Positions 29,301-54,194 are shown, counted from the stretch's first letter. The stretch is DNA of 64,000 nt from Macrostomum hystrix (GCA_950097015.1 CATNEN010000008.1:3100001-3164000), one strand, 5' to 3'. Notes: generated by a model not told the origin, from the sequence alone. Translations and numbers: made by a program.

Positions 29301-30295
29301 AGGGAGATTCTACTGAGGGTTGAAGGGAGATTCTACTGAGGATTGAAGGGAGATTCTACTGAGGATTGAAGGGAGATTCTACTGAGGGTTGAAGGGAGAT
29401 TCTACTGAGGATTGAAGGAGATTCTACTGAGGATTGAAGGGAGATTCTACTGAGGATTAAAGGAAGATTTTACTGAGGATTGAAGGGAGATTCTACTGAG
29501 GGTTGAAGGGAGATTCTACTGAGGGTTGAAGGGAGATTCTACTGAGGATTAAAGGAAGATTTTACTGAGGATTGAAGGGAGATTCTACTGAGGGTTGAAG
29601 GGAGATTTTACTGAGGATTGAAGGGCGATTTTACTGAGGATTGAAGGGAGATTCTTCTGGGGGTTGCAGGGAGATTCTACTGAGGATTGAAGGGAGATTC
29701 TACTGAGGGTTGAAGGGAGATTCTACTGAGGATTGAAGGGAGATTCTACTGAGGATTGAAGGAGATTCTACTGAGGATTGAAGGGAGATTCTACTGAGGA
29801 TTGAAGGGAGATTCTACTGAGGGTTGAAGGGATATTCTACTGAGGATTGAAGGAGATTCTACTGAGGGTTGAAGGGAGATTCTTCTGGGGGTTGCAGGGA
29901 GATTCTACTGAGGATTGAAGGGAGATTCTACTGAGGGTTGAAGGGAGATTCTACTGAGGATTGAAGGGAGATTCTACTGAGGATTGAAGGAGATTCTACT
30001 GAGGATTGAAGGGAGATTCTACTGAGGATTGAAGGGAGATTCTACTGAGGGTTGAAGGGAGATTCTACTGAGGATTGAAGGAGATTCTACTGAGGGTTGA
30101 AGGGAGATTCTACTGAGGATTGAAGGGAGATTCTACTGAGGATTGAAGGAGATTCTACTGAGGGTTGAAGGGAGATTCTACTGAGGATTGAAGGAGATTC
30201 TACTGAGGATTGAAGGGAGATTCTACTGAGGATTGAAGGGAGATTCTACTGAGGATTGAAGGGAGATTCTTCTGGGGGTTGCAGGTAGATTCTCG
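23343..30295. repeat. 23-bp satellite GGGAGATTCTACTGAGGATTGAA, ~300 copies (~7 kb)
   Basis: Period of 23 with recurring variants. Confidence 0.97.
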
Positions 30296-37160: not shown

Positions 37161-37367
37161 ACTCTTTTGGCATTGGTTAGTAGTTTTAAGGACTTTAAAA
37201 CACATTTATAAAGTTGTAATATTTCAAAGGGGTTTTTTCTTTTTTAGAATTCAAACTGTATTAAATGTCTACACTCATAATATTTTCATACAACAAAACT
37301 TTGCTATTTGTATAATTTTTTGCAATTGAAATCCCCGATATGTGGCAAAAAAAAGTTTTTTTTTCAG

Positions 37368-40300
37368 AAGGTCAAAACATTGTCGAACTACTTTTCGGTG
37401 CGCGAATTCTGCAACCGACCAACTGGTACGGAGTTCGAGATCGCAGAGTCGCGGTTCCACGATGTCAACATCGGACTAGCCCTTGAAAAAGTTGGAATTA
37501 ATCCAGTGTATACAGTCTTCTTTGACTTGCTGCCCAGCCACGTCGTTGGTAAGTCAGGACATGGAGATTCAAGTCGGCTCAACTCAAGCGACTGTTGGAA
37601 TTTAATCTTTGGCGCGCACCTGGCAAAATTCTGTGACTCGAGTAGCCGCTGGAAGTTGCTTGTCACACAGGTGCTGGTCAAGAGCCCGCCGCTGTTACTG
37701 TACGTGGCCCAGCAGGTCATGCTTCTGCTGCTGGATGAGGCAAGCGGCTTCAGTTTCGAGGAAGAATTCCCATCCAGGCCGTTCTGGTACTTCATCTACG
37801 GTCTGGAGCTGCTGGAGACTGCGGAGTGAGTTCCTGCCAGCTGGGTATGCAGCTGAGCATCAACTGACAGTCCCCTGAGTGTCCACTGACAAGTCCACTG
37901 AGTGTCCACTGACAGCCAGTGTCAACTGGGACTGGGTCTGTGGCTGGGACAGTGTCACCCAATGGACTGGGTGTAGTGTCCACGGACACGAACAGCCAAG
38001 AATATTGGAAAATTTTGGCCCGCGATCGCCACTAAAAAGTGATAAAATGTTTTTCTCAACCCCGTTAATTTTCTCCCACCTAGCATTGCTGGTTCCGCTG
38101 ACGTCCCGGATGGCGCGGTCAGCTGCGTCGCCCTGCCGCGAGCGAAGCTGGCTCCGTCGTCCTCGCTGAAGCGACTGCACACTCTGCTGTACAAGCTGTA
38201 CATGTCTGGCCGCAAGTTGAAAGGCGACCATCGTGCCGTCAGCAATGCCAGGTGGGACGAGTTCAAACCCTGGTACAGGGAGCGCCTCCGCCAGCAGCAG
38301 CCGGATGACCGCCGCTCTTCCAGGGACAGCTTGGGCGCAAGTTTCCTGGCTGCTTTCCTAGAAATCGTCTTGGCCAACGAGCCGCACCGGCTGCGACTGG
38401 AGAAAGCGCTCAACCGGCAGGCCATCGCTGCGTTTGACGCCAGCCTGAACCGCTGCCTGCAGCAGACTGTGCGATGGAAGCAGCTGCTGTGCCACGATGG
38501 CTTTGCTCGGTTGGCTCAGCTGTCTTGGAAACAGCAACGGCAGCAGCAGCAGCGCTACTGTTTGCGTCTGCTGGCCCACGATTCACGGGCAATCTTCTGC
38601 GAGTTTACCTTAGACAAGGAAAAGGACTATGTGAGTGCTTGGACCTAACTCTCAGCTGACACTGTCAGACTATGGTCACACTGTCCAACTCTCACCTGAC
38701 ACTGTCAGACTATGGTCACACTGTCAAACTCTCAGCTGACAATGTCAGACTATGATCATTCTGTCCAACTCTCTCCTGAAAGACCTCAGTAATCTATGTA
38801 AGGTTCGCTTGTTGTTTAGCAAAATCTGCGCCGATTTCAGAATGTGATGGCCTTCAACTCCGAGTTGGAGCTGTTGGCGATGTCCTGGTTTCTGCAGCGA
38901 CACAGCCTGCTGGCCGTCAGCTTCAGCCAGTCTTTGCTTGACGGCGGACTTGACCAGCGACTGTACTTACCCAAGTGGCTGCAGAAGTACAAGCCTATTC
39001 CTGGCCTGTGAGAGTGGAGGCTGCGCTATCATTTATTTTGTTCTCTGAGCTGAGCAGTGGGTCAGAGTTAGTCTAGTTTTCCTACTCTCACCTGTAGGGA
39101 TCCGTTCCTTTCGGCCAACGCACCGGTCGGCCCAGAATTGTCGCACGAATCCAACCTGCAGCTAGTCAAGTTGGACTGTTCCAAACCAGTGCTCAAGCTC
39201 AAATCTTCGCGTACAGGCGACCTGTTCTACACCAGGCCCGAGACAGATCTGCCCCAGACAGATCGTCGAGACAGTCAGGAAGATCGGCTGTCGCAGGAGG
39301 CGTGCAGCGGTAGGTTGCTGCCTGGCCTGCTGCTGCTGGCGAGGGTGCTGCCGATAGAGGGTCCGTCTCACCGGGTCGACTCGCTGCCCATACTGCTGCC
39401 TAGCGACTTTCAAGAGCATTGTAAACAGAGTAAGGCTGTTGCTGCTTGGGGTTGAGCGTTAAAGACGTTTGCCTCAAAGTCCCTGAGCTTGTCGTGCAAT
39501 TTACGCCCCTTGGGGCCAACCTCCAAGGCACAGTGAGAGTGTACACTGCCTGAGAAAGTCAGGGCAGATGTACACACCTGTGTGAGAGTGTGTTGCGTAT
39601 CTGTGTGAGTGTGTTCAGGAGACAGCGGAATGGGCAGAATTGCCTCCAAATGATGTGGCATTGCCTGCAGCCCTCCTACAATTATTATTGACAGGCAGTG
39701 CCTGTGCGCAGGCAGGCAATGACAGTGCGCAGACAGTGGTGAAGATCACTTTAACCAGGAACCAGTTCAACCTGCCTCACCGATTGGTTCTCAAGCGAAT
39801 CAAATCTGTAAGTTCCTGATTGAAAGGTCTGCTAGTACACTTTCAGATCTGTTTAATTGGCATGCACTTCATGGAGGTTTATGGACTGTTGAGCTTAATT
39901 GAATGGTGAACCTAATTGGACAGGGGGCAGTTTAAAGGTATAAGTGAGAGTGCAATGGACAGGTGGAGTGCGATGGACAGGTGAGAGTGCAATGGACAGG
40001 TGGAGTGCGATGGACAGGTGAGAGTGCAATGGACAGGTGGGAGTGCAATATGGACAGGTGGGAGTGCAATGGACAGGTGGGAGTGCAATGGACAGGTGGG
40101 AGTGCAATGGACAGGTGGAGTGCAATGGACAGGTGAGAGTGCAATGGACAGGTGGGAGTGCAATGGACAGGTGGAGTGCAATGGACAGGTGGGAGTGCGA
40201 TGGACAGGTGGAGTGCAATGGACAGGTGGAGTGCGATGGACAGGTGGGAGTGCGATGGACAGGTGGGAGTGCAATGGACAGGTGGGAATGCAATGGACAG

Positions 40301-43300
40301 GTGGAGTGCAATGGACAGGTGGAGTGCGATGGACAGGTAGGAGTGCAATGGACAGGTGGGAGTGCAATGGACAGGTGGGAGTGCAATGGACAGGAGGAGT
40401 GCAATGGACAGGTGGGAGTGCAATATGGACAGGTGGAGTGCAATGGACAGGTGGGAGTGCAATGGACAGTTGGGAGTGCAATGGACAGGTAGGAGTGCAA
40501 TGGACAGGTGGGAGTGCAATGGACAGGTGGGAGTGCAATGGACAGGAGGAGTGCAATGGACAGGTGGGAGTGCAATATGGACAGGTGGAGTGCAATGGAC
40601 AGGTGGGAGTGCAATGGACAGTTGGGAGTGCGATGGACATGTTGAGTGCAATGGACAGGTGGAGTGCGATGGACAGGTGGGAGTGCAATATGGACAGGTG
40701 GAGTGCAATGGACAGGTGGGAGTGCAATGGACAGTTGGGAGTGCAATGGACAGGTAGGAGTGCAAAGGACAGGTGGGAGTGCAAAGGACAGGTGGGAGTG
40801 CAATGGACAGTGGGAGTGCGATGGACAGGTGGGAGTGCAATATGGACAGGTGGGAGTGCAATGGACAGGTGGGAGTGCAATGGACAGGTGGAGTGCAATG
40901 GACAGGTGGGAGTGCAATGGACAGGTGGGAGTGCAATATGGACAGGTGGGAGTGCAATGGACAGGTGGGAGTGCAATATGGACAGTGGGAGTGCGATGGA
41001 CAGGTGGGAGTGCAATATGGACAGGTGGGAGTGCAATGGACAGGTGGGAGTGCAATGGACAGGTGGAGTGCAATGGACAGGTGGGAGTGCAATGGACAGG
41101 TGGGAGTGCCATGGACAGGTGGGAGTGCAATATGGACAGGTGGGAGTGCAATGGACAGGTGGGAGTGCAATATGGACAGTGGGAGTGCGATGGACAGGTG
41201 GGAGTGCAATGGACAGGTGGGAGTGCAATATGGACAGGTGGGAGTGCAATGGACAGGTGAGAGTGCAATGGACAGGTGGGAGTGCAATGGACAGGTGAGA
41301 GTGCAATGGACAGGTGAGAGTGCAATGGACAGGTGGGAGTGCAATGGACAGGTGGAGTGCAATGGACAAGTGGGAGTGCAATATGGACAGGTGGGAGTGC
41401 AATGGACAGGTGGGAGTGCAATATGGACAGGTGGGAGTGCAATGGACAGGTGGAGTGCAATGGACAGGTGGAGTGCAATGGACAGGTGGAGTGCAATATG
41501 GACAGGTGGGAGTGCAATGGACAGGTGGAGTGCAATGGACAGGTGGGAGTGCAATGGACAGGTGGGAGTGCAATGGACAGGTGGAGTGCAATATGGACAG
41601 GTGGGAGTGCAATAGACAGGTGGGAGTGCAATATGGACAGGTGGAGTGCAATGGACAGGTGGGAGTGCAATGGACAGGTGGGAGTGCAATATGGACAGGT
41701 GGGAGTGCAATGGACAGGTGGGAGTGCAATGGACAGTTGGGAGTGCAATATGGACAGGTGGAGTGCAATGGACAGGTGGAGTGCAATATGGACAGGTGGG
41801 AGTGCAATATGGACAGGTGGGAGTGCAATGGACAGGTGGGAGTGCAATATGGACAGGTGGGAGTGCAATGGACAGGTGGAGTGCAATGGACAGGTGAGAG
41901 TGCAATGGACAGGTGGGAGTGCGATGGACAGGTGGAGTGCGATGGACAGGTGGAGTGCGATGGACAGGTGGGAGTGCAATATGGACAGGTGGAGTGCAAT
42001 GGACAGGTGGGAGTGCAATGGACAGGTGGGAGTGCAATGGACAGGTGGGAGTGCAATGGACAGGTGGGAGTGCAATATGGACAGGTTGAAACTGAATCAT
42101 CGGCCATCCGCAGTTCTCAAATATTTACAAGCTGAGTCGCCTGCAGTCGCTGGCAGCCCATTCCTGCCGGCTATCGTTCGCCAACATCAACCCGACGCTG
42201 GCGCTGACTCTGCAGCCGGACTTCGGCATCGTCTCGGAGCTCCGGCTGGGTTCGCTCGTTTCTCTGCTGAGGAGCAGTCTGAGAAAGGCCGACTTCACCG
42301 TCAGGCATTTCTTGACCGTGCACAACCAGTGCCTGAGTGCACTCATCTACCTGCTGCGCCAGCCCTGCGTGAGTCCTGACTCGAACCCAGTTCCAGTCTG
42401 ATGGATTCCTGATCGGAACCCAGTTCCTGTCTAATGGAATTCTGATTGAAACCCAGTTACATTCTGATGGATTCCTGATTGGAACTCAGTTCCAGTCTGA
42501 TGGATTCCTGATCGGAACCCAGTTCCAGTCTGATGGATTCCTGATCGGAACTCAGTTCCAGTCTGATGGATTCCTGATTGGAACTCAGTTCCAGTCTGAT
42601 GGATTCCTGATCGGAACTCAGTTCCAGTCTGATGGATTCCTGATTGGAACTCAGTTCCAGTCTGATGGATTCCTGATCGGAACCCAGTTCCATTCTGATG
42701 GATTCCTGATTGGAACTCAGTTCCAGTCTGATGGATTCCTGATTGGAACTCAGTTCTAGTCTGATGGATTCCTGATCGGAACCCAGTTCCAGTCTGATGG
42801 ATTCCTGATCGGAACTCAGTTCCAGTCTGATGGATTCCTGATTGGAACTCAGTTCCAGTCTGATGGATTCCTGATCGGAACCCAGTTCCATTCTGATGGA
42901 TTCCTGATTGGAACTCAGTTCCAGTCTGATGGATTCCTGATTGGAACTCAGTTCCAGTCTGATGGATTCCTGATCGGAACCCAGTTCCATTCTGATGGAT
43001 TCCTGATTGGAACTCAGTTCTAGTCTGATGGATTCCTGATCGGAACCCAATTCCAGTCTGATAGATTCCTGATTGGAACCCAGTTCTAGTCTGATGTAAT
43101 TATGATTGGAAATCCAGTCTGATGGATTCCTGATCAGAACCCAGTTCCTGTCCAGCGTTCATCAGAATATTTCCCTTGCATCACTAGGCGGACATCAGGC
43201 ACCACAACAATATCAAGCTGTCCAACATCCTGGTGGAGTTTTTCGATGACCGGGCCATTGTTATCCGGCTCAGTGACCTGTGCTCCAGTGTCAAACAGGA

Positions 43301-46300
43301 GAGTGTTACTGCCGACCTGCAGCGGCTTTACGTTTGCATGCATGACGAGCTGCTGCAAAAATTTCGACACCAGGGCCTGGAGGTCAGCAGCTGCGAGCAC
43401 TGCTCACAGCTTCTGCCAGTTCTGAAGCGATTGCGAATGGGCGATAGATGCGACATGCTGGCTGATAGTGCTGCGCTCCTCATTGAACTGCTCAACTACT
43501 CCAACTCTGTATCCGATTCCAGTGAGCTCGGGGTTCAGTAGTTAGCTCGGTCTCTGTGCCTGAGTTGGGTGGGTCATTAGGCTGAGTTCGGTGGGTCATT
43601 AGCCTGAGTTGGGTGTGTCATTAGCCTGAGTTGGGTGGGTCAATAGCCTGAGTTGGGTGGGTCATTAGCCTGAGTTGGGTGTGTCATTAGTGTGGTGGGC
43701 CATTAGTGTGGTGGGTCATTAGTGTGGTGGGTCATTAGTGTGGTGGGTCATTAGTGTGGTGGGTCATTAGTGTGGTGGGTCATTAGTGTGGTGGGTCATT
43801 AGTGTGGTGGGTCATTAGTGTGCTGGGTCATTAGTGTGGTGGTTCATTAGTGTGGTGGGTCATTAGTGTGGTAGGTCATTAGTGTGGTGGGTCATTAGTG
43901 TGGTAGGTCATTAGTGTGGTGGGTCATTAGTGTGGTGGGTCATTAGTGTGGTGGGTCATTAGTGTGGTAGGTCATTAGTGTGGTGGGTCATTAGTGTGGT
44001 GGGTCATTAGTGTGGTGGGTCATTAGTGTGGTAGGTCATTAGGGTGGCATTCATCTTGAGCAAAGCTCGTGAACAATTTGTAGTACTCGATGCCTCTGGC
44101 AGTCACGCAGTGGTGCCTGTTGGCCAGCGGCTGCTGGCGGCAGCGGCTGACATCGAGGCCGGCCAGTGTATTGGCATATCGGATATTCCTCAGGGCCTGC
44201 TGCTGAACCCCACCGACCTGCAGCTGACCAGTGAGAGCCTGGGCAGCGGGCACTACGGCGCAGTGGAGAAGGGCATGCTGCTGTACAATGGCAAACGCAT
44301 TCCAGTGGCAGTCAAGACCCTCAGCAGCAAGACTTCCTACAAGCGCTTTGTCGACGAAATTAAAATCCAAGGGAATCTCCCTGAGCACGATAACATTCTC
44401 AAGCTGCTGAAAGTTGAAGAGGGTAAGTAGCTAGTGTCTCAGTGTGTCTTTGTGAGCTGGTGTGTGTCAGTGAGCAGGTGTGTCAGTGAGCAGGTGTGTC
44501 AGTGAGCAGGTGTGTCAGTAAGCTGGTGTGTGTCAGTGAGCAGGTGTGTCAGTAAGCTGGTGTGTGTCAGTGAGCAGGTGTGTCAGTAAGCTGGTGTGTG
44601 TCAGTGAGCAGGTGTGTGTCAGTGAGCAGGTGTGTCAGTAAGCTGGTGTGTGTCAGTGAGCAGGTGTGTCAGTAAGCTGGTGTGTGTCAGTGAGCAGGTG
44701 TGTGTCAGTGAGCAGGTGTGTCAGTAAGCTGGTGTGTGTCAGTGAGCAGGTGTGTGTCAGTGAGCAGGTGTGTCAGTAAGCTGGTGTGTGTCAGTGAGCA
44801 GGTGTGTGTCAGTGAGCAGGTGTGTGTCAGTGAGCTGGTGTGTGTCAGTGAGCAGGTGTGTCAGTAAGCTGGTGTGTGTCAGTGAGCAGGTGTGTGTCAG
44901 TGAGCAGGTGTGTCAGTAAGCTGGTGTGTGTCAGTGAGCAGGTGTGTGTCAGTGAGCAGGTGTGTCAGTAAGCTGGTGTGTGTCAGTGAGCAGGTGTGTC
45001 AGTAAGCTGGTGTGTGTCAGTGAGCTGGTGTGTGTCAGTGAGCTGGTGTGTGTCAGTGAGCTGGTGTGTGTCAGTGAGCAGGTGTGTGTCAGTGAGCAGG
45101 TGTGTCAGTGAGCAGGTGTGTGTCAGTGAGCAGGTGTGTCAGTAAGCTGGTGTGTGTCAGTGAGCAGGTGTGTCAGTGAGCAGGTGTGTCAGTGAGCAGG
45201 TGTGTGTCAGTGAGCAGGTGTGTGTCAGTGAGCAGGTGTGTGTCAGTGAGCAGGTGTGTCAGTAAGCTGGTGTGTGTCAGTGAGCAGGTGTGTGTCAGTG
45301 AGCAGGTGTGTCAGTAAGCTGGTGTGTGTCAGTGAGCAGGTGTGTCAGTGAGCAGGTGTGTCAGTGAGCAGGTGTGTCAGTAAGCTGGTGTGTGTCAGTG
45401 AGCAGGTGTGTCAGTAAGCTGGTGTGTGTCAGTGAGCAGGTGTGTCAGTAAGCTGGTGTGTGTCAGTGAGCAGGTGTGTGTCAGTGAGCAGGTGTGTGTC
45501 AGTGAGCAGGTGTGTCGGTGAGCAGGTGTGTCAGTGAGCAGGTGTGTCAGTGAGCAGGTGTGTGTCAGTGAGCAGGTGTGTCGGTGAGCAGGTGTGTCAG
45601 TGAGCAGGTGTGTCAGTAAGCTGGTGTGTGTCAGTGAGCTGGTGTGTGTCAGTGAGCTGGTGTGTGTCAGTGAGCTGGTGTGTGTCAGTGAGCAGGTGTG
45701 TCAGTGAGCAGGTGTGTGTCAGTGAGCAGGTGTGTCAGTAAGCTGGTGTGTGTCAGTGAGCAGGTGTGTCAGTGAGCAGGTGTGTCAGTGAGCAGGTGTG
45801 TGTCAGTGAGCAGGTGTGTGTCAGTGAGCAGGTGTGTGTCAGTGAGCAGGTGTGTCAGTAAGCTGGTGTGTGTCAGTGAGCAGGTGTGTGTCAGTGAGCA
45901 GGTGTGTCAGTAAGCTGGTGTGTGTCAGTGAGCAGGTGTGTCAGTGAGCAGGTGTGTCAGTGAGCAGGTGTGTCAGTAAGCTGGTGTGTGTCAGTGAGCA
46001 GGTGTGTCAGTAAGCTGGTGTGTGTCAGTGAGCAGGTGTGTCAGTAAGCTGGTGTGTGTCAGTGAGCAGGTGTGTCAGTGAGCAGGTGTGTCAGTGAGCA
46101 GGTGTGTCAGTGAGCAGGTGTGTCAGTAAGCTGGTGTGTGTCAGTGAGCAGGTGTGTCAGTAAGCTGGTGTGTGTCAGTGAGCAGGTGTGTCAGTAAGCT
46201 GGTGTGTGTCAGTGAGCAGGTGTGTGTCAGTGAGCAGGTGTGTGTCAGTGAGCAGGTGTGTGTCAGTGAGCAGGTGTGTCGGTGAGCAGGTGTGTCAGTG

Positions 46301-49300
46301 AGCAGGTGTGTCAGTGAGCAGGTGTGTGTCAGTGAGCAGGTGTGTCGGTGAGCAGGTGTGTCAGTGAGCAGGTGTGTCAGTGAGCAGGTGTGTCAGTAAG
46401 CTGGTGTGTGTCAGTGAGCTGGTGTGTGTCAGTGAGCTGGTGTGTGTCAGTGAGCTGGTGTGTGTCAGTGAGCAGGTGTGTGTCAGTGAGCAGGTGTGTC
46501 AGTGAGCAGGTGTGTGTCAGTGAGCAGGTGTGTCAGTAAGCTGGTGTGTGTCAGTGAGCAGGTGTGTCAGTGAGCAGGTGTGTCAGTGAGCAGGTGTGTG
46601 TCAGTGAGCTGGTGTGTGTCAGTGAGCAGGTGTGTCAGTAAGCTGGTGTGTGTCAGTGAGCAGGTGTGTCAGTAAGCTGGTGTGTGTCAGTGAGCAGGTG
46701 TGTCAGTAAGCTGGTGTGTGTCAGTGAGCAGGTGTGTGTCAGTGAGCAGGTGTGTGTCAGTGAGCAGGTGTGTCGGTGAGCAGGTGTGTCAGTGAGCAGG
46801 TGTGTCAGTTGTAAGGAGTGCTGAGCCGAGAGATGATTTGTGTAGACGAAAAAGCCTAAAGCGAAGTAGGCTCTGAGCAATCGATTATATTTGATATTTG
46901 GTGATGAACATGCAACGTGCGGCCGATGGGTGCAGATGTACATTAATCGCTCGCAACTCCACGCACACTACGATATAACTCAGGGCCTACAGCTAACACG
47001 GCTAAATGAACGCGCGCCCACTTGGCGCCTACACTTCTCCCCAACTAGAGAGATTGCCGGGGGATAAAAGAGAAAAAAGCAAAGCTTTAGAGCAAGGGAT
47101 TGTTGCAACAATCTAGCGGAAAAAGTCCATAGAACGCAAGACAGTCCATAGCAACTCATTTGAGAAAATACGGCCGCACGCAAAATGAGTTATTGTTTGT
47201 AGCTAAGCACTTTGCTACGCGCAGCCCTGGGATGCTGTCGTGTGGCGACACAATCGCTAGGGTTAGCGGTTGGCTGGCCGGCAGACTGGCCGGCGGACTG
47301 GCCGGCGGACTGACCAGCAGAGTGGCCGGCAGACTGGCCGGCGGACTGGCCGGCGGACTGACCAGCAGAGTGGCCGGCAGACTGGCCGGCAGACTGGCCG
47401 GCGGACTGACCAGCAGACTGGCCGGCAGACTGGCCGGCGGACTGGCCGGTGGACTGACCAGCAGAGTGGCCGGCAGACTGGCCGGCGGACTGGCCGGCGG
47501 ACTGGCCGGCGGACTGGCCGGTGGACTGACCAGCAGAGTGGCCGGCAGACTGGCCGGCGGACTGGCCGGCGGACTCTATCAGGGGCCGCAGTTGAGTGAC
47601 GTGTCGCATGCACGATTGTTCGCCGCGTTGAAGGACGCACGTGTCTCCCTGGACCAGCTTGACAGTCCACGGAGAAGGCTCAAAAGGCAGTTGAAGCTTG
47701 TTGCGCGGTTGCTGCTTTCGTAGAACTTTGCTGCCGTCAATGATGCCGTGCTCCTGGGCAGCCTTGCGGTCATCGAATCTTGATTTCATATCTTGCACGT
47801 AATTCCGGTGCCAGTCTTGAACTTCTTCATGATTCACCTCGACCGGCTGAGACGGCTTAGTGGTCGGGATGCCATCGTTCATCTTCCTGCCCATGAGGAG
47901 TTCAGCGGGTGCGCGGCCGGTTGCTCGGTGCGGTGTTGTGCGGAAAGCCAGCAGCCAGTCCTCGATGGCCTCCTTCCAGTTACGCCCTTCGGCCACAGCC
48001 GTCTGGATGACTTTTCCAATGCTCCGGTTGACTCGCTCTGTCGCTCCATTGGATTCAGGGTGGAGCGGGCAGATAAGGCGATGTCGAATGCCATAGGTGG
48101 TGAGGAAGCTGCGGAAAGCGGCTGAATTGAATGGCGGGCCGTTGTCAGTGACCACCTCGATAGGGACGCCGAATCTACCGAACAGTCGGCGAAGGTGCGG
48201 GCTCACGCTCTCCGCTGTCGATGAGTTCAGGAAGCTGACTTCTGGATATTTTGAGTAGAGGTCTGTGATGACTAGCAGCATCTGGCCCTGTACTGGTCCG
48301 TAGAAGTCCATGCCTAGAGTGAGCCAGGCACCGTCTGGGATCTGCGTTGGTTTAAGAGGCGTTTGACGCGCTCCAGTGGAGGCGGCCTGGCAGAGCGTGC
48401 AGCACTGAACAAAGCTCTCGCAGTCGCTGCGCATGCGAGGCCACCAGACTTTCGTTTGCAGCCGCTTCAGGGTTCGGTCAGCGCCTAGATGGCCGGTGTG
48501 CGCTAGTTGGAGGACAGGCCTGCGCAGTGTCTCCGGGATGACGATGAGGTCGCCCCTTAGCAGGACGCCGTCACTCTCTGAGAGCTCGTTGCTGACGGTC
48601 TTGTAGGAGCGCTGGGCCGGGTCGCGGATATTCCAGTTACCGGTTCGGATGGCGCTTAGCGCCGCCTGGATGCCGCTGTCGGTGCGCGACGCTTCCCGCA
48701 CTTGCGCGAGGCTGAAGCCCTTTGGCACAGCTCCGGCCGACACGGCGTTGACGAAGGCGGTGTCAAGTTCTTCAGCAACGTTCCTCCTTGATTCTGGCAG
48801 TGGCTGCCGGCTTAGCAGGTCGGCTGGATTGGTCGGCCCGGGTCGGTAAATCAGATCGAAGCGGAGGTGCTGGATGCGCAATGCCATCCGTTCGATTCGT
48901 GGCGGTGGACGAGAGCCAGGCTTGAACAGCGGCACGAGTGGTCGGTGGTCTGTTACTACAGTGAAGCCTGGGTCTCCGGCTAGGTAGTGTTCAAACTTCA
49001 AGCACCCGAATTTGATGGCCAGAGCTTCTCGCTCTATCTGCGCGTACCGCTGTTCCACTGCTGAAAGGGCTCTGCTGGCGTAAGCCACGGGTCTGCTGCT
49101 GCCGTCCGGCTGCCTCTGCGTGAGGATGGCGCCCAGTCCGACCGGGGAGGCGTCCACTAGGAGCTCGGTTTGCCGCCTGCGGTCGAAGAAGGCGAGCGTT
49201 TCCGCGGCGCCTATTGCTTTTTTAATGCTTTCGAATGCCGCAGTGTGCTTATCCGTCCACTCCCAGACCTGGCCCTTCTTTGTCAATTGACGTAGGGGCC

Positions 49301-52300
49301 CGGCGAGGTGAGCGAAGTTTGGGACGAATTTTGACAAGAAGTTCGCGGTGCCAAGGAATGAGCGGACGTCGGAAACGTTTTCAGGTTGCCGAAAGCTCTG
49401 CATGGCCTCAATTTTCTCAGCAGCTGGCTCCATGCCCCGAGCAGTCAGGCGCATGCCGAGAAACTCGATGGACGGTCGGGAGAACCTGCACTTGTCCCTG
49501 TTGAGGGTGATGCCGTACTCACGCAGGCGCTGAAGGCACGCGTCCAGTCTCTTATGGTGTTGCTTTAAATCAGATGCGTAGATCACCACGTCATCGTGCG
49601 CCCACCGGACGCCTTCAATGTCGCTGAGGATGCCCAGCATGATCCGTTGCAAAATCTCCGAGGCATTCGTGAACCCCATGCTAAGTCTTTTAAGTCGCAT
49701 TAGTCCGAGAGGCGTGCTGAAGGTGAAGTAGTGGCGGCTGTCTTCGTGAACTGGAATCTGGTAGAACGCCTTGCGGATGTCTAGTTCACTGAAAATTTTA
49801 GCGTTGGCCATCTCCTCCGTGATCTCTTCTAGCGTGGGGATCTGTTGTTTCTCCGGTATAACGAAAGCGTTGAGGTCGCGGAGATCCTGGCAGATTCTGA
49901 CGCCCCCGTCGGTCTTGGGCACTACTACCATACGGGATACCCAGGCGCTTGGTCCTTTGACGGCCTCAATAATGTCCTGCTTCTCTAGTGCCCGGAGTTC
50001 GTTAACTACGGCTTCTTTGAGGTGAGCAGCTACCCGGGAAGGCGCCTGGCATACCGGAATGGCATTTTCGGATAGCTGGACTTTGACCTCTACGCCCTTG
50101 ATGCAGCCGATGCCGTTGAATGCCTCTTTGTGCCGGTGCAGAATTGCGTCGAGTTGAGGATCGTTTGACTGCTGTGACGGCGTGTCAGAGACTGCGCTAA
50201 TTTCCTGCGCGTCGGAGATCTGTGGCCTCTGGATCTTCAGCACTCCAAGTTTGAATGCAGGCTGGCGTCCCAGAATAGTCAGGCCGTCGCCGTCCATGAT
50301 GTGAAATGTCGCGGTAGTCTTGGCTGCTCCAACTTTGATGTGGAGTTCGGCGACCCCTGCAATCTTTAGAGGTGTCGGTACCCCGTAGGCGCGGACTTCT
50401 GTTCTTGTTGGACGAAGGTCCGGTAGATTAAGAGTCCTGAAGGTTTTGAGACTCATGATACTACAGCTGGCTCCGCTATCAATCATCATGGGCAGTTGTC
50501 GATTTGCCACCTGTACGGACAGCGAGACGTCGGCTGGGTAGTCGCCGCCGTCGTACAGAGCAAACACATCTTCCTCCGTGGAGCCGTCAGCCGAACTGAA
50601 GACTGCATTAGTGCTGATTCTCTGCTGCTGGGTCCGGTTGCTGTGCATCTGTCGAGGCTGGCGGCAGGCCAAAGCGAGATGGTTGGGTTTGCCGCAGTTG
50701 CGGCAGATTTTACCTTTGGCTGCGTCACAGGTGGCGTGGCCTTTCTCGCCGCAGCGGTAACACGTGAGCTGCTTCTGATCGCCGGACCTGCTGCTCGTCA
50801 GAGTCGCGCCTCTTCTGTCAGGTTTCACCTTATCGCCATGGGCAACGCTCGCCACATGCGTCTCCGACTTCTCCATCTCGGTGGCCTGTTCATCGGCTGC
50901 CTCAAACGCCCTAGCCTTCCGTAGCGCCTCGTCAAGGCTGATGTTCGCTTCCTGGAGCAGCCGCCTGCGAAGCTTGTCGGATGAGCAAGTTGCCACGAGC
51001 TGGTCCCTGATGAGGGAGTCTTTGAGATTCTCGAACTCACACGGCTCTGCAGCTGTGCGCAATCTGGCGTACCATGCGTCAATAGATTCTCCAGCTGCCT
51101 GTGTGCTGAGGCGGAACTGGTATCTAGCGAAGACTACGTTTTTTCGAGCATTGAAGTGAGACTTTAGAGCGTCAAGCGTATGCGAGAGGGTGAGTTCGCC
51201 GGCCTGTGCTTTCGCTGTCAGGTCGGCGTTTTCACGGATGATGTCGGCGATTTCCTTGCCAGCTGTGTAGCTCAGTAGCTTGCATCTTTGCTTCTCGTTG
51301 GTGATGCCTGATGCATCAATGAAGTCTTCGAAACGAGACGCCCATTGATTCCAGCGCTTGCCCGCGTTGTGTGGGTCTGCTGATATTGCGAATGGCTCAG
51401 GCGGGGGCAGTGAGAGAAAGTTGGCTGTCATTTTTTTACCGCGCGGTAGGCGGCTTGCGATGCCACTGTAAGGAGTGCTGAGCCGAGAGATGATTTGTGT
51501 AGACGAAAAAGCCTAAAGCGAAGTAGGCTCTGAGCAATCGATTATATTTGATATTTGGTGATGAACATGCAACGTGCGGCCGATGGGTGCAGATGTACAT
51601 TAATCGCTCGCAACTCCACGCACACTACGATATAACTCAGGGCCTACAGCTAACACGGCTAAATGAACGCGCGCCCACTTGGCGCCTACATCAGTGAGCA
51701 GGTGTGTCAGTGAGCAGGTGTGTCAGTGAGCAGGTGTGTCAGTGAGCAGGTGTGTCAGTGAGCAGGTGTGTCGGTGAGCAGGTGTGTCGGTGGGCTTGTA
51801 TTCCCATAACGGTGCCAAGTTACTTCAATCCTCGCAGGCATGAAGCAGCTGATCACGCCCTTAATGGAGACAGCATTGGACAAGTTCCTGACGAAGAACC
51901 GGGAGAAGATTAGTCGACCGGGCGGTCTGGCGCTCAGCTTCTTGCGGCAAATCGCTTGTGTGAGCCAACGGAGCGGAGTACAATGGCTCGGGCCTTTAAT
52001 ATAACTCTTAAACATTTTTCATAATTAGATGTCGAGGACTTAATACCTTAGAAAATCTGCGTGTAGTTGCTCCCGCCGTTTACCCAATCAAACATAATAT
52101 TTGAGACTCGCTAAAATGCAGGGCATGAAATTTCTATCCGACAATGGAGTGTTCCACTGCGATCTGGCCACCCGCAATGTCCTGATGGAGAATCTCAACA
52201 GCCTCGTTGGTCCTCAGCTCAGAATCGGCGACTTCGGCCTGTCGGGCATGTTCAAAACCGATGCCAACTATTACCGCATGGCCGACGACCGCGAGCTGCC

Positions 52301-52682
52301 CATCGCCAACCTGCCGCCAACTGACATCTATGAGAACTGCATCTGCAAGACCACAGACAGCTGGAGCTTTGGCATCCTGATCTGGGAGCTCTTCAACGAT
52401 TGCCCAGTGCATCAGGGCTTCCAATTGCAGGGTATCTCCGAGCTAAAACTGGCACGGCTCAAGCAGTTCGTGACCGAAAAGCCCGAGTGCTACCTGTTGG
52501 ACCTGAAGCGTTTGCCCAACAACCTGAGTGAGCTGGTCAAGCGCTGCTGGGAGCCGGTCGCCAAGAAAAGAATAACTTTGCAGGAAATCTATTACGAGCT
52601 GCACGCTATGACCTCACTGGCTCTGCCATCCGAAGCCAACGGTCACTGCGGACCTGGCCAGTCAGAGCTCTCCACCACTTGA
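37368..52682 (+). CDS. JAK: Janus-kinase-like protein (FERM-like, degenerate SH2 region, pseudokinase, tyrosine kinase). Exons: 37368-37825, 38084-38630, 38841-39007, 39098-39429, 39695-39807, 42114-42368, 43188-43521, 44084-44422, 51838-51959, 52122-52682
   Basis: The spliced exons total 3228 nt with one open frame and compatible phases at all nine introns. FERM-like EKVGINPVYTVFFDL (JAK2: KACGITPVYHNMFAL). Pseudokinase LGSLVSLL...QCLSALIYL...HNNIKLSNILV...IRLSD (JAK JH2: HGNVCAKNILL...IKLSD). Kinase LGSGHYGAV, VAVK, HDNILK, HCDLATRNVLMEN, IGDFGL, NYY, SWSFGILIWELF. Confidence 0.85.
38648..38780. repeat. Short ~40-bp tandem repeat in JAK intron 2
   Basis: ACTCTCAGCTGACACTGTCAGACTATGGTCACACTGTCCA, about 3 copies. 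Confidence 0.75.
39448..39689 (+). mobile_element. SINE copy, same family, filling JAK intron 4
   Basis: GAGCGTTAAAGACGTTTGCCTC...GAGAGTGTACACTGCCTGAGAAAGTCAGGGCAGATG...CAGCCCTCCTACAATTATTATT. Confidence 0.65.
39943..42085. repeat. Variable 18-22-bp minisatellite GAGTGCAATGGACAGGTGG in JAK intron 5
   Basis: Read directly; generates the ~720-aa artefact ORFs. Confidence 0.96.
42378..43145. repeat. 33-bp minisatellite GTTCCAGTCTGATGGATTCCTGATTGGAACTCA in JAK intron 6, ~23 copies
   Basis: Period of 33; each unit carries inverted GTTCCA/TGGAAC. Confidence 0.95.
43555..44042. repeat. ~22-bp units then 16-bp GGGTCATTAGTGTGGT array in JAK intron 7
   Basis: Read directly from the sequence. Confidence 0.93.
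46810..51690 (-). mobile_element. Full-length Ty3/Gypsy LTR retrotransposon (Mag-like organisation)
   Basis: 224-bp TG...CA LTRs at 46810-47033 and 51467-51690 that read identical. 5-bp TSD TCAGT on both sides. Polypurine tract GGGGAGAAG before the 3' LTR. PBS-like TGGCATCGC after the 5' LTR. Single gag-pol ORF. Confidence 0.97.
47190..51431 (-). CDS. Gag-Pol polyprotein (1413 aa): Gag with two zinc knuckles, protease, RT, RNase H, integrase
   Basis: CYRCGEKGH and CRNCGKPNHLALAC; MIDSGAS; YQIP...AHDDVVI; VDASPVGLGAIL; HTGHLG...CTLC, MDFYGP, TDNGP, NGATERVN. The order PR-RT-RH-IN is the Gypsy type. Confidence 0.96.
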   Translation of the reverse strand: MTANFLSLPPPEPFAISADPHNAGKRWNQWASRFEDFIDASGITNEKQRCKLLSYTAGKEIADIIRENADLTAKAQAGELTLSHTLDALKSHFNARKNVVFARYQFRLSTQAAGESIDAWYARLRTAAEPCEFENLKDSLIRDQLVATCSSDKLRRRLLQEANISLDEALRKARAFEAADEQATEMEKSETHVASVAHGDKVKPDRRGATLTSSRSGDQKQLTCYRCGEKGHATCDAAKGKICRNCGKPNHLALACRQPRQMHSNRTQQQRISTNAVFSSADGSTEEDVFALYDGGDYPADVSLSVQVANRQLPMMIDSGASCSIMSLKTFRTLNLPDLRPTRTEVRAYGVPTPLKIAGVAELHIKVGAAKTTATFHIMDGDGLTILGRQPAFKLGVLKIQRPQISDAQEISAVSDTPSQQSNDPQLDAILHRHKEAFNGIGCIKGVEVKVQLSENAIPVCQAPSRVAAHLKEAVVNELRALEKQDIIEAVKGPSAWVSRMVVVPKTDGGVRICQDLRDLNAFVIPEKQQIPTLEEITEEMANAKIFSELDIRKAFYQIPVHEDSRHYFTFSTPLGLMRLKRLSMGFTNASEILQRIMLGILSDIEGVRWAHDDVVIYASDLKQHHKRLDACLQRLREYGITLNRDKCRFSRPSIEFLGMRLTARGMEPAAEKIEAMQSFRQPENVSDVRSFLGTANFLSKFVPNFAHLAGPLRQLTKKGQVWEWTDKHTAAFESIKKAIGAAETLAFFDRRRQTELLVDASPVGLGAILTQRQPDGSSRPVAYASRALSAVEQRYAQIEREALAIKFGCLKFEHYLAGDPGFTVVTDHRPLVPLFKPGSRPPPRIERMALRIQHLRFDLIYRPGPTNPADLLSRQPLPESRRNVAEELDTAFVNAVSAGAVPKGFSLAQVREASRTDSGIQAALSAIRTGNWNIRDPAQRSYKTVSNELSESDGVLLRGDLIVIPETLRRPVLQLAHTGHLGADRTLKRLQTKVWWPRMRSDCESFVQCCTLCQAASTGARQTPLKPTQIPDGAWLTLGMDFYGPVQGQMLLVITDLYSKYPEVSFLNSSTAESVSPHLRRLFGRFGVPIEVVTDNGPPFNSAAFRSFLTTYGIRHRLICPLHPESNGATERVNRSIGKVIQTAVAEGRNWKEAIEDWLLAFRTTPHRATGRAPAELLMGRKMNDGIPTTKPSQPVEVNHEEVQDWHRNYVQDMKSRFDDRKAAQEHGIIDGSKVLRKQQPRNKLQLPFEPSPWTVKLVQGDTCVLQRGEQSCMRHVTQLRPLIESAGQSAGQSAGHSAGQSTGQSAGQSAGQSAGQSAGHSAGQSTGQSAGQSAGQSAGQSAGQSAGQSAGHSAGQSAGQSAGQSAGHSAGQSAGQSAGQSAGQPTANPSDCVATRQHPRAARSKVLSYKQ

Positions 52683-52684
52683 CG

Positions 52685-53325
52685 GGTGCCAACCTACACT
52701 CTGGGCTGGGGTAGGTGCCAGCTTACACTCTAGGCTGGGTGGGTGCCAGCTTACACTCTAGGCTGGGTGGGTGCCAGCTTACACTCTGGACTGGGGGGTG
52801 GGTATCAGCCTACACTCTGGGCTGGGGGTGGGTATCAGCCTACACTCCGGGCTGGGGTGGGTGTCAGCCTACACTCTGGACTGGGGTAGGTGCCAACCTA
52901 CACTCTGGGCTGGGGTAGGTGCCAGCTTACACTCTAGGCTGGGTGGGTGCCAGCTTACACTCTGGACTGGGGGGTGGGTATCAGCCTACACTCCGGGCTG
53001 GGGTGGGTGTCAGCCTACACTCTGGGCTGGGGGTGGGTATCAGCCTACACTCCGGGCTGGGGTGGGTGTCAGCCTACACTCTGGACTGGGGTGGGTTTCA
53101 GCCTACACTCCGGGCTGGGGTGGGTGTCAGCCTACACTCTGGACTGGGGTGGGTGTCAGCCTACACTCTAGGCTGGGTTGGGTGTCAGCCTACACTCTGG
53201 ACTGGGGTGGGTGTCAGCCTACACTCTGGACTGGGGTGGGTGTCAGCCTACACTCTGGACTGGGGTGGGTGTCAGCCTGTACTCTAGGCTGGGGTGGGTG
53301 TCAGCCTTCACTCTGAGCTGGGGTT
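52685..53325. repeat. 29-31-bp minisatellite GTGTCAGCCTACACTCTGGACTGGGGTGG directly after the JAK stop codon
   Basis: Read directly from the sequence. Confidence 0.93.
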
Positions 53326-54194
53326 GGGCAAGCCAACGAATCTTTATAATTCTCCTTTTACTCGTCATTAAGCGCCATTTTACATTTTTAAATGTTGTTT
53401 TTAGCTGGCCTGGACTAATTTTACTTTAATTTTTATGTAACTTTTTTCTGAATTTTCTCAGCCTATTTTTTTTGTGATTTGTTAGAGAATTGACTGGACA
53501 CTGGATGAAAGTAATGTAACGAATTTAATGAAGTTTTGCCTCATGAATAGAAAGCTTTAAAATTAATTAGCTTCAGCAGCTTATTGTATTTAGGCAGTAT
53601 TTTCTTGTATGATCATGCTTACATAATAAGCGTAAGCCTATTAAGCTAGAATTATTCAGTTTCTGCATATTGCCAACTTAACAAATAAATGATTTGTTGC
53701 TCTTGAGAGCATAACAGGTGTGGCTTGAAAGCAGAACTTTTGTTAAAGACAAATCTATTTATTGACAGCACCTCTAGTAAATAAATTGAGGTTTTCACAT
53801 GCAAGTACTTGTATAATTAACGCTCACACAATCACATAATTACAATTACATGAATTAATTAAAACAAAAATGTAATCTCATACTGTAATAAAACTATGGC
53901 ACAGTATGTTTCATTCTCATGAATATAGTTTAAATTTATAATCTCCGACGATTATAAACCTTAGATTATCCTGGAGAGAAACAAAATAATGTACGATTAG
54001 ATAAGATAATTTGAAATATGAGCACTGCCCCATTACAACTTTGGTAACAGTTAATGAGAATATGAATTTACTGCGAAGTAAACCCTACTAAAAGTTTAGT
54101 GGAAGCAACGGTGTACACAACCGCGATAGTCATTCGTCATTCGTAATTTTGTGATTTCGATTAAGCCATCTTAGATCTTAAAGTTGATCTCGAC

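What the first reader, a model, noticed from the sequence alone, without database searches (positions are those of the whole stretch)
37368..52682. Divergent Janus kinase hidden across 15 kb of minisatellite- and retrotransposon-filled introns
Seen: ten exons splice into one open 1075-codon frame with JAK-order domains and specific JAK echoes (GINPVY in FERM; HNNIKLSNILV/IRLSD pseudokinase; GHYG, HDNILK, DLATRN, activation-loop YY). The ORF track shows only fragments. Known: a tandem pseudokinase plus tyrosine kinase behind FERM defines JAKs. My recollection, which needs checking, is that JAK is missing or hard to find in several flatworm kinomes, so a divergent copy here would matter for JAK-STAT evolution.
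Basis: partly seen in the sequence, partly recalled or inferred. Interest (0 to 1): 0.8.

Follow-up and report, generated by a model that had tools for sequence, protein, structure and literature searches.

The report
Divergent JAK-like kinase gene in flatworm
A ten-exon gene hidden between repeat-filled introns of a Macrostomum-like flatworm encodes a dead kinase domain of the Janus-kinase type followed by a live tyrosine kinase, which makes it the best candidate so far for a flatworm JAK, although its front half cannot be recognised and no RNA evidence could be obtained.

Summary
I rebuilt a ten-exon chain (37368-52682, +). Exon 1 starts at a splice acceptor, so the start codon is still missing.

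- **Tyrosine kinase:** the last three exons encode an intact domain (Pfam 6e-27).
- **Pseudokinase:** exons 6-7 lie just upstream and match the JAK pseudokinase (JH2) specifically. They score 20.1 + 13.4 bits on a JH2 profile, 10.0 + 0.0 on a generic kinase profile and 2.4 - 1.4 on JH1. All 97 control kinases prefer JH1.
- **Closest relatives:** ranks 2-4 among 1.84 billion protein representatives are bivalve JAKs, but no hit exceeds 44% identity.
- **Tree:** the kinase-domain tree is unresolved. Placement with JAK is not rejected (p-AU 0.35).
- **Front half:** the N-terminal 470-510 residues match no FERM or SH2 profile, and AlphaFold on single exons failed.
- **Pathway partner:** a STAT gene exists elsewhere in the genome.

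Verdict: a probable, very divergent JAK-family kinase. The JAK-type pseudokinase-kinase pair is shown; the FERM-SH2 half is not. The scan also noted this same stretch in another reading (s1-306107), but not on other DNA.

The parts
37368..37825 (+). Exon 1 of my model (152 codons). It starts at an acceptor (ttttttcag|AAG) and has no in-frame ATG. It carries the 'ALEKVGINPVYTVFFDL' echo of the JAK FERM F1 motif.
   Evidence: for the sites; the best local hhalign hit falls on the F1 motif, but E is 0.23-0.28; no profile hit. AF2 pLDDT 40.5.
38084..38630 (+). Exon 2 (182 codons). Helix-rich, with no recognisable family.
   Evidence: for the sites; no Pfam hit. ESM Atlas gave nothing. AF2 pLDDT 38.3.
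38820..39007 (+). Exon 3 (about 62 codons), unrecognised.
39098..39309 (+). Exon 4 (about 70 codons). An alternative donor at 39429 in the same phase adds 40 codons. Unrecognised.
39671..39807 (+). Exon 5 (45 codons). By position and pattern ('LLTGSACAQ...TVVKITL') it is the likely start of the pseudokinase N-lobe. This is inference only.
   Evidence: for sites and phase; no significant profile score.
42114..42368 (+). Exon 6 (85 codons; alternative acceptors at 42132 and 42147 in the same phase). Pseudokinase helix C to helix E.
   Evidence: JAK profile positions 531-605, 17 bits, E 3e-5 among 569 pieces. JH2 20.1, other kinases 10.0, JH1 2.4 bits; best of 500 shuffles 5.4 bits.
43188..43521 (+). 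Exon 7 (111 codons). Pseudokinase catalytic loop 'HHNNIKLSNILV' (Asn where active kinases have the catalytic Asp, as in the JAK JH2 'HGN') and 'IRLSDLC' in place of DFG. A divergent C-lobe follows.
   Evidence: JH2 13.4, other kinases 0.0, JH1 -1.4 bits; best shuffle 3.4 bits.
44066..44422 (+). Exon 8 (about 118 codons). End of the pseudokinase and linker, then the kinase N-lobe (GSGHYG, VAVK, helix-C Glu, HDNILK).
   Evidence: PF07714 4.7e-8. JAK profile 813-888, 43 bits. JH1 37.9, other kinases 32.7 bits..
51838..51959 (+). Exon 9 (40 codons). Kinase hinge and helices D-E ('LITPLMETALDKFL...SFLRQIAC').
   Evidence: hhalign columns 919-944, colinear with the neighbouring exons.
52122..52682 (+). 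Exon 10 (186 codons plus stop). Kinase C-lobe with HCDLATRN, DFG, activation-loop YY and DSWSFG, plus a JAK-length insert between helices F and H.
   Evidence: PF07714 6e-27; best PDB match is mouse JAK1 7t6f, 1.1e-20; 117.7 bits; spacing 63 against a JAK median of 64 and 54 for other kinases.
39944..42086 (.). 19-bp minisatellite (112 copies) that fills intron 5.
42374..43152 (.). 33-bp minisatellite (24 copies) that fills intron 6.
43558..44047 (.). 22-bp and 16-bp minisatellites that fill intron 7.
44452..46809 (.). 18/34-bp minisatellite in intron 8. It continues at 51691-51792 on the far side of the retrotransposon.
46810..51690 (-). LTR retrotransposon inserted into the intron-8 minisatellite, antisense to the gene. 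LTRs at 46810-47033 and 51467-51690 are 100% identical. It has an intact 1413-codon gag-pol frame at 47190-51431.
   Evidence: RT, RNase H and integrase domains; closest named relatives are Macrostomum lignano proteins.
52684..53324 (.). 29-bp minisatellite directly after the stop codon, probably inside the 3' UTR. The first AATAAA is at 53684.

Best explanation
This is a single-copy gene for a very divergent non-receptor tyrosine kinase of the Janus-kinase family.

Shown:
- The C-terminal third is an intact tyrosine-kinase domain. The glycine loop, lysine, helix-C glutamate, catalytic Asp and Asn, DFG and a tandem-tyrosine activation loop are all present.
- It has two unusual substitutions: HRD reads HCD and APE reads PPT.
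- Directly before it lies a kinase-like domain that has lost the catalytic Asp and the DFG motif. This domain resembles the JAK JH2 pseudokinase specifically.

Inferred:
- As in JAKs, the pseudokinase restrains the kinase.
- The unrecognisable N-terminal 470-510 residues hold the enzyme on the tail of a receptor that has no kinase of its own.
- Receptor pairing lets two kinases phosphorylate each other on the YY loop and then phosphorylate the receptor and a STAT. A STAT gene exists in this genome.

The gene was missed because its exons are separated by minisatellites and a young retrotransposon.
For: - **Kinase domain:** Pfam PF07714 at 6e-27 and 4.7e-8. The best PDB match of the C-lobe exon is full-length mouse JAK1 (1.1e-20), followed by a block of JAK1, TYK2, JAK3 and JAK2 entries.
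- **Closest relatives:** of 1.84 billion representatives, ranks 2-4 are bivalve JAKs, and about 25 of the best 150 are JAKs.
- **Colinear JAK profile hits:** a 24-sequence JAK profile hits four pieces of the locus in order, at positions 531-605, 608-633, 813-888 and 929-1089. hhalign gives the same order for exons 6 to 10.
- **JH2 specificity:** exons 6+7 score 33.5 bits on the JH2 profile, 1.0 on JH1 and 10.0 on other kinases.
- **Controls:** all 97 non-JAK kinases prefer JH1 (best difference -11.7 bits), and shuffled exons reach at most 5.4 and 3.4 bits.
- **JH2-type catalytic loop:** it has Asn where active kinases have the catalytic Asp, and 'LSD' in place of DFG, as in JH2.
- **Helix F to helix H spacing:** 63 residues, against a JAK median of 64 and 54 for other kinases.
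- **Gene structure:** nine GT-AG introns in compatible phase with no inner stops.
- **Copy number:** the C-lobe exon is single copy in the genome.
- **STAT:** a STAT gene lies on contig C24.
Against: - No FERM or JAK SH2 profile matches the first four exons or any other place in the genome.
- The F1 echo is not significant (E 0.23-0.28).
- On C-lobe profiles the kinase domain is no closer to JAK JH1 (108 bits) than to other kinases (114-126 bits).
- In the best tree the window sits on a very long branch beside unnamed metagenomic kinase fragments, not in the JAK clade.
- The N-lobe exon's best PDB matches are EGFR, Eph and Met, not JAK.
- There is no start codon, no RNA evidence and no orthologue above 44% identity, even though Macrostomum lignano proteins are in the databases.
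Confidence: 0.68

Rival explanations
1. It is a JAK-derived kinase that kept the pseudokinase-kinase pair but replaced or lost the FERM-SH2 receptor-docking half. It would then be a soluble or differently anchored tyrosine kinase that does not work through cytokine-type receptors.
For: All FERM and SH2 profile searches are negative. The ESM Atlas does not recognise exon 2. A named mollusc JAK2 that Pfam also fails on, Patella P0059, still matches other JAK N-termini at 1e-10, whereas this gene does not.
Against: - The N-terminal half has about the length of a FERM-SH2 module: 470-510 residues here against about 540 in JAKs (the JAK figure is from my own knowledge).
- The best local alignment of exon 1 against two different JAK alignments falls on the F1 motif both times.
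- Single-exon searches of a gene on such a long branch have low power.
Confidence: 0.17
2. There are two units. Exons 1-4 belong to another gene or are non-coding open frames, and the kinase gene starts near exon 5.
For: No RNA evidence links them. Exons 1-4 match nothing. Antisense open frames of similar length lie over exons 1-2. I chose among alternative splice sites partly by phase.
Against: - Strong GTGAGT and GTAAGT donors and pyrimidine-rich acceptors chain exons 1-5 in phase without stops.
- Exon 5 starts in mid-codon and has no ATG of its own.
- A pseudokinase-kinase pair with no N-terminal domain would be unusual for this family (my own knowledge).
Confidence: 0.08
3. It is a silent or decaying gene copy (pseudogene) that is drifting. 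That would explain the long branch and the altered HRD and APE motifs.
For: The branch is very long, at 2.8 changes per column. HRD reads HCD and APE reads PPT. There is no start codon, a young retrotransposon sits in intron 8, and no listed run is on record as RNA.
Against: About 1056 codons stay open across ten exons with intact splice sites, which would not survive that much neutral change. The catalytic Lys, Glu, Asp, Asn and DFG are all kept. Four small runs of about 43 million letters hold 96% of the last exon's words, which suggests transcriptomes, though this is not proven.
Confidence: 0.07

Closest known systems
Lophotrochozoan JAKs: Lingula anatina JAK2 XP_013399489 (P0016), Mytilus galloprovincialis JAK1-like XP_076088168 (P0003), Argopecten irradians JAK2-like XP_069106529 (P0002), Patella vulgata JAK2 XP_050402352 (P0059)
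   Same: Pseudokinase followed by a C-terminal tyrosine kinase. They rank at the top for the C-lobe exon. The JH2 profile matches exons 6-7. The helix F to helix H insert has the same length.
   Different: Identity is only 27-34% in the kinase domain. Their N-termini are recognisably alike and most carry Pfam FERM_F1, FERM_F2 or SH2_1, which this gene does not. The bivalve proteins are longer, with extra kinase-like stretches.
Vertebrate JAK1 (PDB 7t6f, full-length mouse JAK1)
   Same: It is the best solved-structure match of the C-lobe exon. The alignment has only one four-residue gap, and the activation loops are similar: TDxxYYxxxDDR[DE]xP.
   Different: HRD reads HCD, APE reads PPT, and FERM and SH2 are not detectable. 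The N-lobe exon matches EGFR, Eph and Met better.
Drosophila Hopscotch (from my own knowledge, not tested here)
   Same: It is a single invertebrate JAK whose FERM and SH2 are hard to detect by profile, and it works with one STAT and one receptor.
   Different: No sequence comparison was made here.
Unnamed metagenomic and protist TK/TKL kinase fragments (P0057, P0081, P0098, P0011)
   Same: They are the nearest rows to the window's C-lobe in the free tree, and their group profiles score as high as or higher than JAK JH1.
   Different: Support is weak (bootstrap 88, SH-aLRT 29). Pfam finds only a single kinase domain in the ones scanned (P0057, P0081, P0098), so none shows a JH2-type pseudokinase upstream. 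The grouping is probably long-branch attraction.

Membership tests
Janus kinase (JAK) family | C-terminal tyrosine-kinase domain (JH1) with the catalytic residues | tested here: met
   PF07714 at 6e-27 and 4.7e-8. GSGHYG, VAVK, helix-C Glu, HCD, N, DFG and YY are all present.
Janus kinase (JAK) family | JH1 falls inside the JAK JH1 clade | tested here: inconclusive
   In C-lobe-only trees the window has a branch of 2.8 and lies outside JAK without support. Held with JAK, the tree is 11.3 lnL lower, p-AU 0.353. Group profiles do not favour JAK.
Janus kinase (JAK) family | Pseudokinase (JH2) directly N-terminal of JH1, with Asn replacing the catalytic Asp | tested here: met
   Colinear profile hits at 531-605 and 608-633. 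JH2-specific scores of 20.1 + 13.4 bits, against 10.0 + 0.0 for other kinases and 2.4 - 1.4 for JH1. Controls.
Janus kinase (JAK) family | N-terminal FERM domain recognisable by sequence profile (Pfam FERM_F1, FERM_F2, Jak1_Phl, or a JAK alignment) | tested here: not met
   No hit on exons 1-4 or anywhere in the genome. The only signal is a non-significant echo at the F1 motif.
Janus kinase (JAK) family | FERM and SH2 folds in the N-terminal half | tested here: inconclusive
AlphaFold on single exons without an alignment gave pLDDT 40.5 and 38.3. No fold search was justified.
Janus kinase (JAK) family | SH2-like domain between FERM and JH2 | tested here: not met
   PF21990 and PF00017 gave nothing at the locus. 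The JAK N-terminal alignment hit only SH2 domains of other genes.
Janus kinase (JAK) family | All domains on one transcript | not testable with these tools
No spliced protein of this gene is in the protein collections.
JAK-STAT pathway | A STAT gene in the same genome | tested here: met
   The exon at L015:5568-6209 (-) matches only STAT chains in the PDB (17 hits, best 7.3e-6). STAT_bind scores 18.9 bits about 3.4 kb upstream of that exon on the same strand.

The most novel reading that the evidence does not exclude
This is the first Janus kinase of a flatworm. It would be retained in the early-branching Macrostomum lineage together with a divergent STAT, with a receptor-docking half so remodelled that no FERM or SH2 profile sees it. 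It may be paired with the kinase-less lectin/Ig receptor with tyrosine motifs that lies 1.5 kb downstream. That would mean JAK-STAT signalling was not lost at the base of the flatworms, and that profile-based kinome surveys overlook such genes.
Probability: 0.4. Interest if true: 0.72.

Novelty: new variant of a known kind. Interest (0 to 1): 0.58.

Why it matters
- **A gap in flatworm signalling.** JAK-STAT is a core animal signalling route. Flatworm STATs have been described (planarian stat5: PMC13662587, PMC8797187), but I found no report of a flatworm JAK, and the Schistosoma mansoni tyrosine-kinase families include none (PMC3135232).
- **A testable candidate.** A JAK-type pseudokinase-kinase gene in a Macrostomum-like flatworm gives a concrete upstream kinase for flatworm STAT. 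It can be tested by RNAi in a regenerating model animal.
- **What it would say about gene loss.** It suggests that the loss of JAK, if real, happened within the flatworms rather than at their origin.
- **A practical lesson.** Genes cut up by minisatellite-filled introns can escape both ORF tracks and gene models. No orthologue above 44% identity exists in public protein sets, although Macrostomum lignano proteins are included.

Tried and rejected
- **Word search.** The C-lobe exon found nothing.
- **Big HMMER search.** It found no close orthologue.
- **Pfam and PDB.** Pfam on the N-terminal open frames gave nothing. PDB phmmer of exon 7 alone gave nothing.
- **JAK profiles on the genome.** JAK FERM, PH-like and SH2 Pfam profiles hit nothing at the locus.
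- **Custom F1 profile.** Exon 1 did not rise above noise. Weak hits in the AT-rich 34-35.5 kb region lie on both strands at about 0-8 bits and were rejected as noise.
- **ESM Atlas.** Exon 2 scored at the level of shuffled sequence.
- **AlphaFold.** Exons 1 and 2 gave pLDDT about 40, so I ran no fold search.
- **C-lobe trees.** FastTree, quick and careful trees were all unresolved.
- **First STAT_bind hit.** On its own it matched no STAT in the PDB. The STAT call rests on the SH2 exon found afterwards.
- **Joined model.** Every search was done exon by exon and by reference.


Full report
**What is there.**

The window is G000:C8:3100001-3164000 of a 220-Mb genome. Earlier notes of this scan call it a Macrostomum-like flatworm. 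I checked this indirectly: the closest named relatives of the retrotransposon in the locus are Macrostomum lignano proteins, up to 80% identical.

From the DNA around each open piece I built this exon chain:

| Exon | Coordinates | Note |
|---|---|---|
| E1 | 37368-37825 | starts at an acceptor |
| E2 | 38084-38630 | |
| E3 | 38820-39007 | |
| E4 | 39098-39309 | or donor 39429 |
| E5 | 39671-39807 | |
| E6 | 42114-42368 | or acceptors 42132, 42147 |
| E7 | 43188-43521 | |
| E8 | 44066-44422 | |
| E9 | 51838-51959 | |
| E10 | 52122-52682 | ends in the stop codon |

All nine introns are GT-AG with GTGAGT-, GTAAGT- or GTAGGT-type donors. All phases fit and no exon has an inner stop. The total is 3171 nt, or 1056 codons plus stop, and 1096 with the alternative E4 donor. 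The count of 1075 is not reproduced exactly.

37368 is an acceptor, and E1 has no in-frame ATG. An ATG at 37340 is one base out of frame, and the A8 and T10 runs lie between it and E1. Another follow-up in this genome reported a one-base frame break 'as assembled'. The 5' end is therefore open.

**Introns.**

- Intron 5 is filled by a 19-bp array of 112 copies.
- Intron 6 is filled by a 33-bp array.
- Intron 7 is filled by 22-bp and 16-bp arrays.
- Intron 8 (7415 nt) holds an 18/34-bp array.
- A 4881-bp LTR retrotransposon has inserted into that array, antisense to the gene. Its 224-nt LTRs are 100% identical and its 1413-codon gag-pol frame is intact.

Such arrays cover much of the window. 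They are a trait of this genome, not of this gene.

**The kinase domain.**

- E8 and E10 match Pfam PK_Tyr_Ser-Thr at 4.7e-8 and 6e-27.
- E9 supplies the hinge.
- The glycine loop, the VAVK lysine, the helix-C glutamate, the catalytic Asp and Asn, DFG and a YY activation loop are all present.
- HRD reads HCD, and the APE motif reads PPT.
- The C-lobe exon is single copy in the genome. The next best locus is 33% identical.

**Is the kinase domain of JAK type?** The evidence is mixed.

For:
- The best PDB match of E10 is full-length mouse JAK1 (1.1e-20). A block of JAK1, TYK2, JAK3 and JAK2 entries follows, mixed with EGFR, TrkC and ROR1.
- In the search of 1.84 billion representatives, ranks 2-4 are bivalve JAKs. 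Lingula, Crassostrea and Patella JAKs follow, and about 25 of the best 150 hits carry JAK N-termini. Part of that rank comes from summing two or three kinase-like domains per protein.
- The distance from helix F to helix H is 63 residues. The JAK JH1 median is 64 and the median for other kinases is 54, with 13 of 130 at 60 or more.

Against:
- The N-lobe exon prefers EGFR, Eph and Met.
- C-lobe group profiles give 108.7 bits for JAK JH1, 115.8 for a protist-type group and 126 for all others together.
- In FastTree, quick and careful IQ-TREE trees of the C-lobe, the window has a branch of 2.6-2.8 changes per column. It sits without support beside unnamed metagenomic kinase fragments.

Holding the window with the JAK JH1 clade costs 11.3 lnL, p-AU 0.353. 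An earlier test against the poorer quick tree even favoured the held tree. The tree therefore neither shows nor rejects JAK membership.

**The pseudokinase.** This is the decisive result.

A profile of 24 full-length JAKs from the hit list was searched against all 569 six-frame pieces of window 30-56 kb. It hit four + strand pieces in colinear order:

| Piece | JAK profile positions | Score |
|---|---|---|
| 42096-42398 | 531-605 | E 3e-5 |
| 43188-43538 | 608-633 | E 0.009 |
| 44035-44427 | 813-888 | 43 bits |
| 52098-52679 | 929-1089 | 117.7 bits |

hhalign gave the same order for E6 to E10.

The first two hits are adjacent in the profile. In the DNA a phase-0 GT-AG intron joins them, and it removes the 33-bp array exactly.

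Domain-specific profiles separate the signal:

| Exon | JH2 | Other kinases | JH1 |
|---|---|---|---|
| E6 | 20.1 | 10.0 | 2.4 |
| E7 | 13.4 | 0.0 | -1.4 |

Controls:
- All 97 non-JAK kinase domains score higher on JH1 than on JH2. The best difference is -11.7 bits and the median is -81.
- 500 shuffles of E6 and of E7 reach at most 5.4 and 3.4 bits.

The aligned catalytic loop reads HHNNIKLSNILV against the JH2 consensus vHGNicckNvLv, and IRLSD against vKLsD. So Asn replaces the catalytic Asp and DFG is lost, as in JAK JH2.

E5 looks like strands 1-3 of this domain by position and pattern only. The rest of its C-lobe (the end of E7 and the start of E8) has the right length but no detectable similarity.

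A pseudokinase directly before a tyrosine kinase is, by established knowledge, the hallmark of JAKs among tyrosine kinases.

**The N-terminal half.**

E1-E4 encode 468-508 residues, close to the roughly 540 of a JAK FERM-SH2 module. None of the following found a FERM or SH2 match at the locus:
- Pfam on the open pieces;
- FERM_F1, FERM_F2, Jak1_Phl and SH2_1 searched over the whole genome;
- the full JAK profile;
- an F1-only profile;
- a 13-sequence FERM-SH2 alignment searched over the genome, which hit only SH2 domains of other genes;
- the ESM Atlas.

Among the 150 hits, GI.P[VIL][YF] occurs only twice, both times in JAK F1 domains. The best local hhalign alignment of E1 against two different JAK alignments falls on that F1 motif both times. 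However, E is 0.28 and 0.23. That is a lead, not a demonstration.

AlphaFold on E1 and E2 alone gave pLDDT 40.5 and 38.3, so I ran no fold search.

One named mollusc JAK2 (Patella, P0059) also lacks Pfam FERM hits. Its N-terminus still matches other JAKs at 1e-10, which this gene's does not.

**Expression.**

The runs search found no holder on record as RNA. Four runs of about 43 million letters hold 96% of the last exon's words. Two runs of other organisms hold 41-49%. I worked beside those places afterwards. Expression and splicing are therefore untested.

**Pathway context.**

STAT_bind and STAT_alpha profiles gave only weak hits. Around the best hit, on contig C24, an exon (L015:5568-6209, minus strand) carries a 'GSFLLRFSE' SH2 and matches only STAT chains in the PDB (17 hits, best 7.3e-6). 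A sub-threshold STAT_bind match of 18.9 bits lies about 3.4 kb upstream of that exon on the same strand. The genome therefore has a STAT.

**Literature.**

- The S. mansoni tyrosine-kinase family table lists no Jak (PMC3135232).
- Planarian stat5 is described without a JAK (PMC13662587; PMC8797187).
- I found no paper on a Macrostomum JAK.

**Verdict.**

The locus most likely encodes a very divergent member of the JAK family. The JAK-type pseudokinase-kinase pair is shown. The FERM-SH2 half, the start codon and the transcript are not. I file it as a new variant of a known kind, not as a proven JAK orthologue.

Noticed in passing
G000:C24:1484568-1489048 (L015:5568-6209 minus strand; L011:1474-1953 minus strand): A divergent STAT gene. 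Its SH2 exon matches only STAT chains in the PDB, and a sub-threshold STAT_bind match lies about 3.4 kb upstream of that exon on the same strand. A minisatellite-filled intron lies between them.
   Followed up: partly
window 46810-51690 (-): An LTR retrotransposon with 100% identical 224-nt LTRs and an intact 1413-codon gag-pol frame. It is inserted inside an 18-bp minisatellite, is very young and may still be active. Its closest named relatives are Macrostomum lignano proteins.
   Followed up: partly
It is a conceivable partner for a JAK-like kinase. I did not examine it.
   Followed up: no
window 37340-37367: An ATG is followed by A8 and T10 runs directly before the exon-1 acceptor and is one base out of frame with exon 1. 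If the assembly carries one base too many in these runs, this would be the start codon.
   Followed up: no
window 4780-31694: At least ten further long minisatellites with units of 20-46 bp, including a 23-bp array of 302 copies at 23343-30293 with strong GC skew. Arrays of this kind fill much of the window.
   Followed up: no
   Followed up: no
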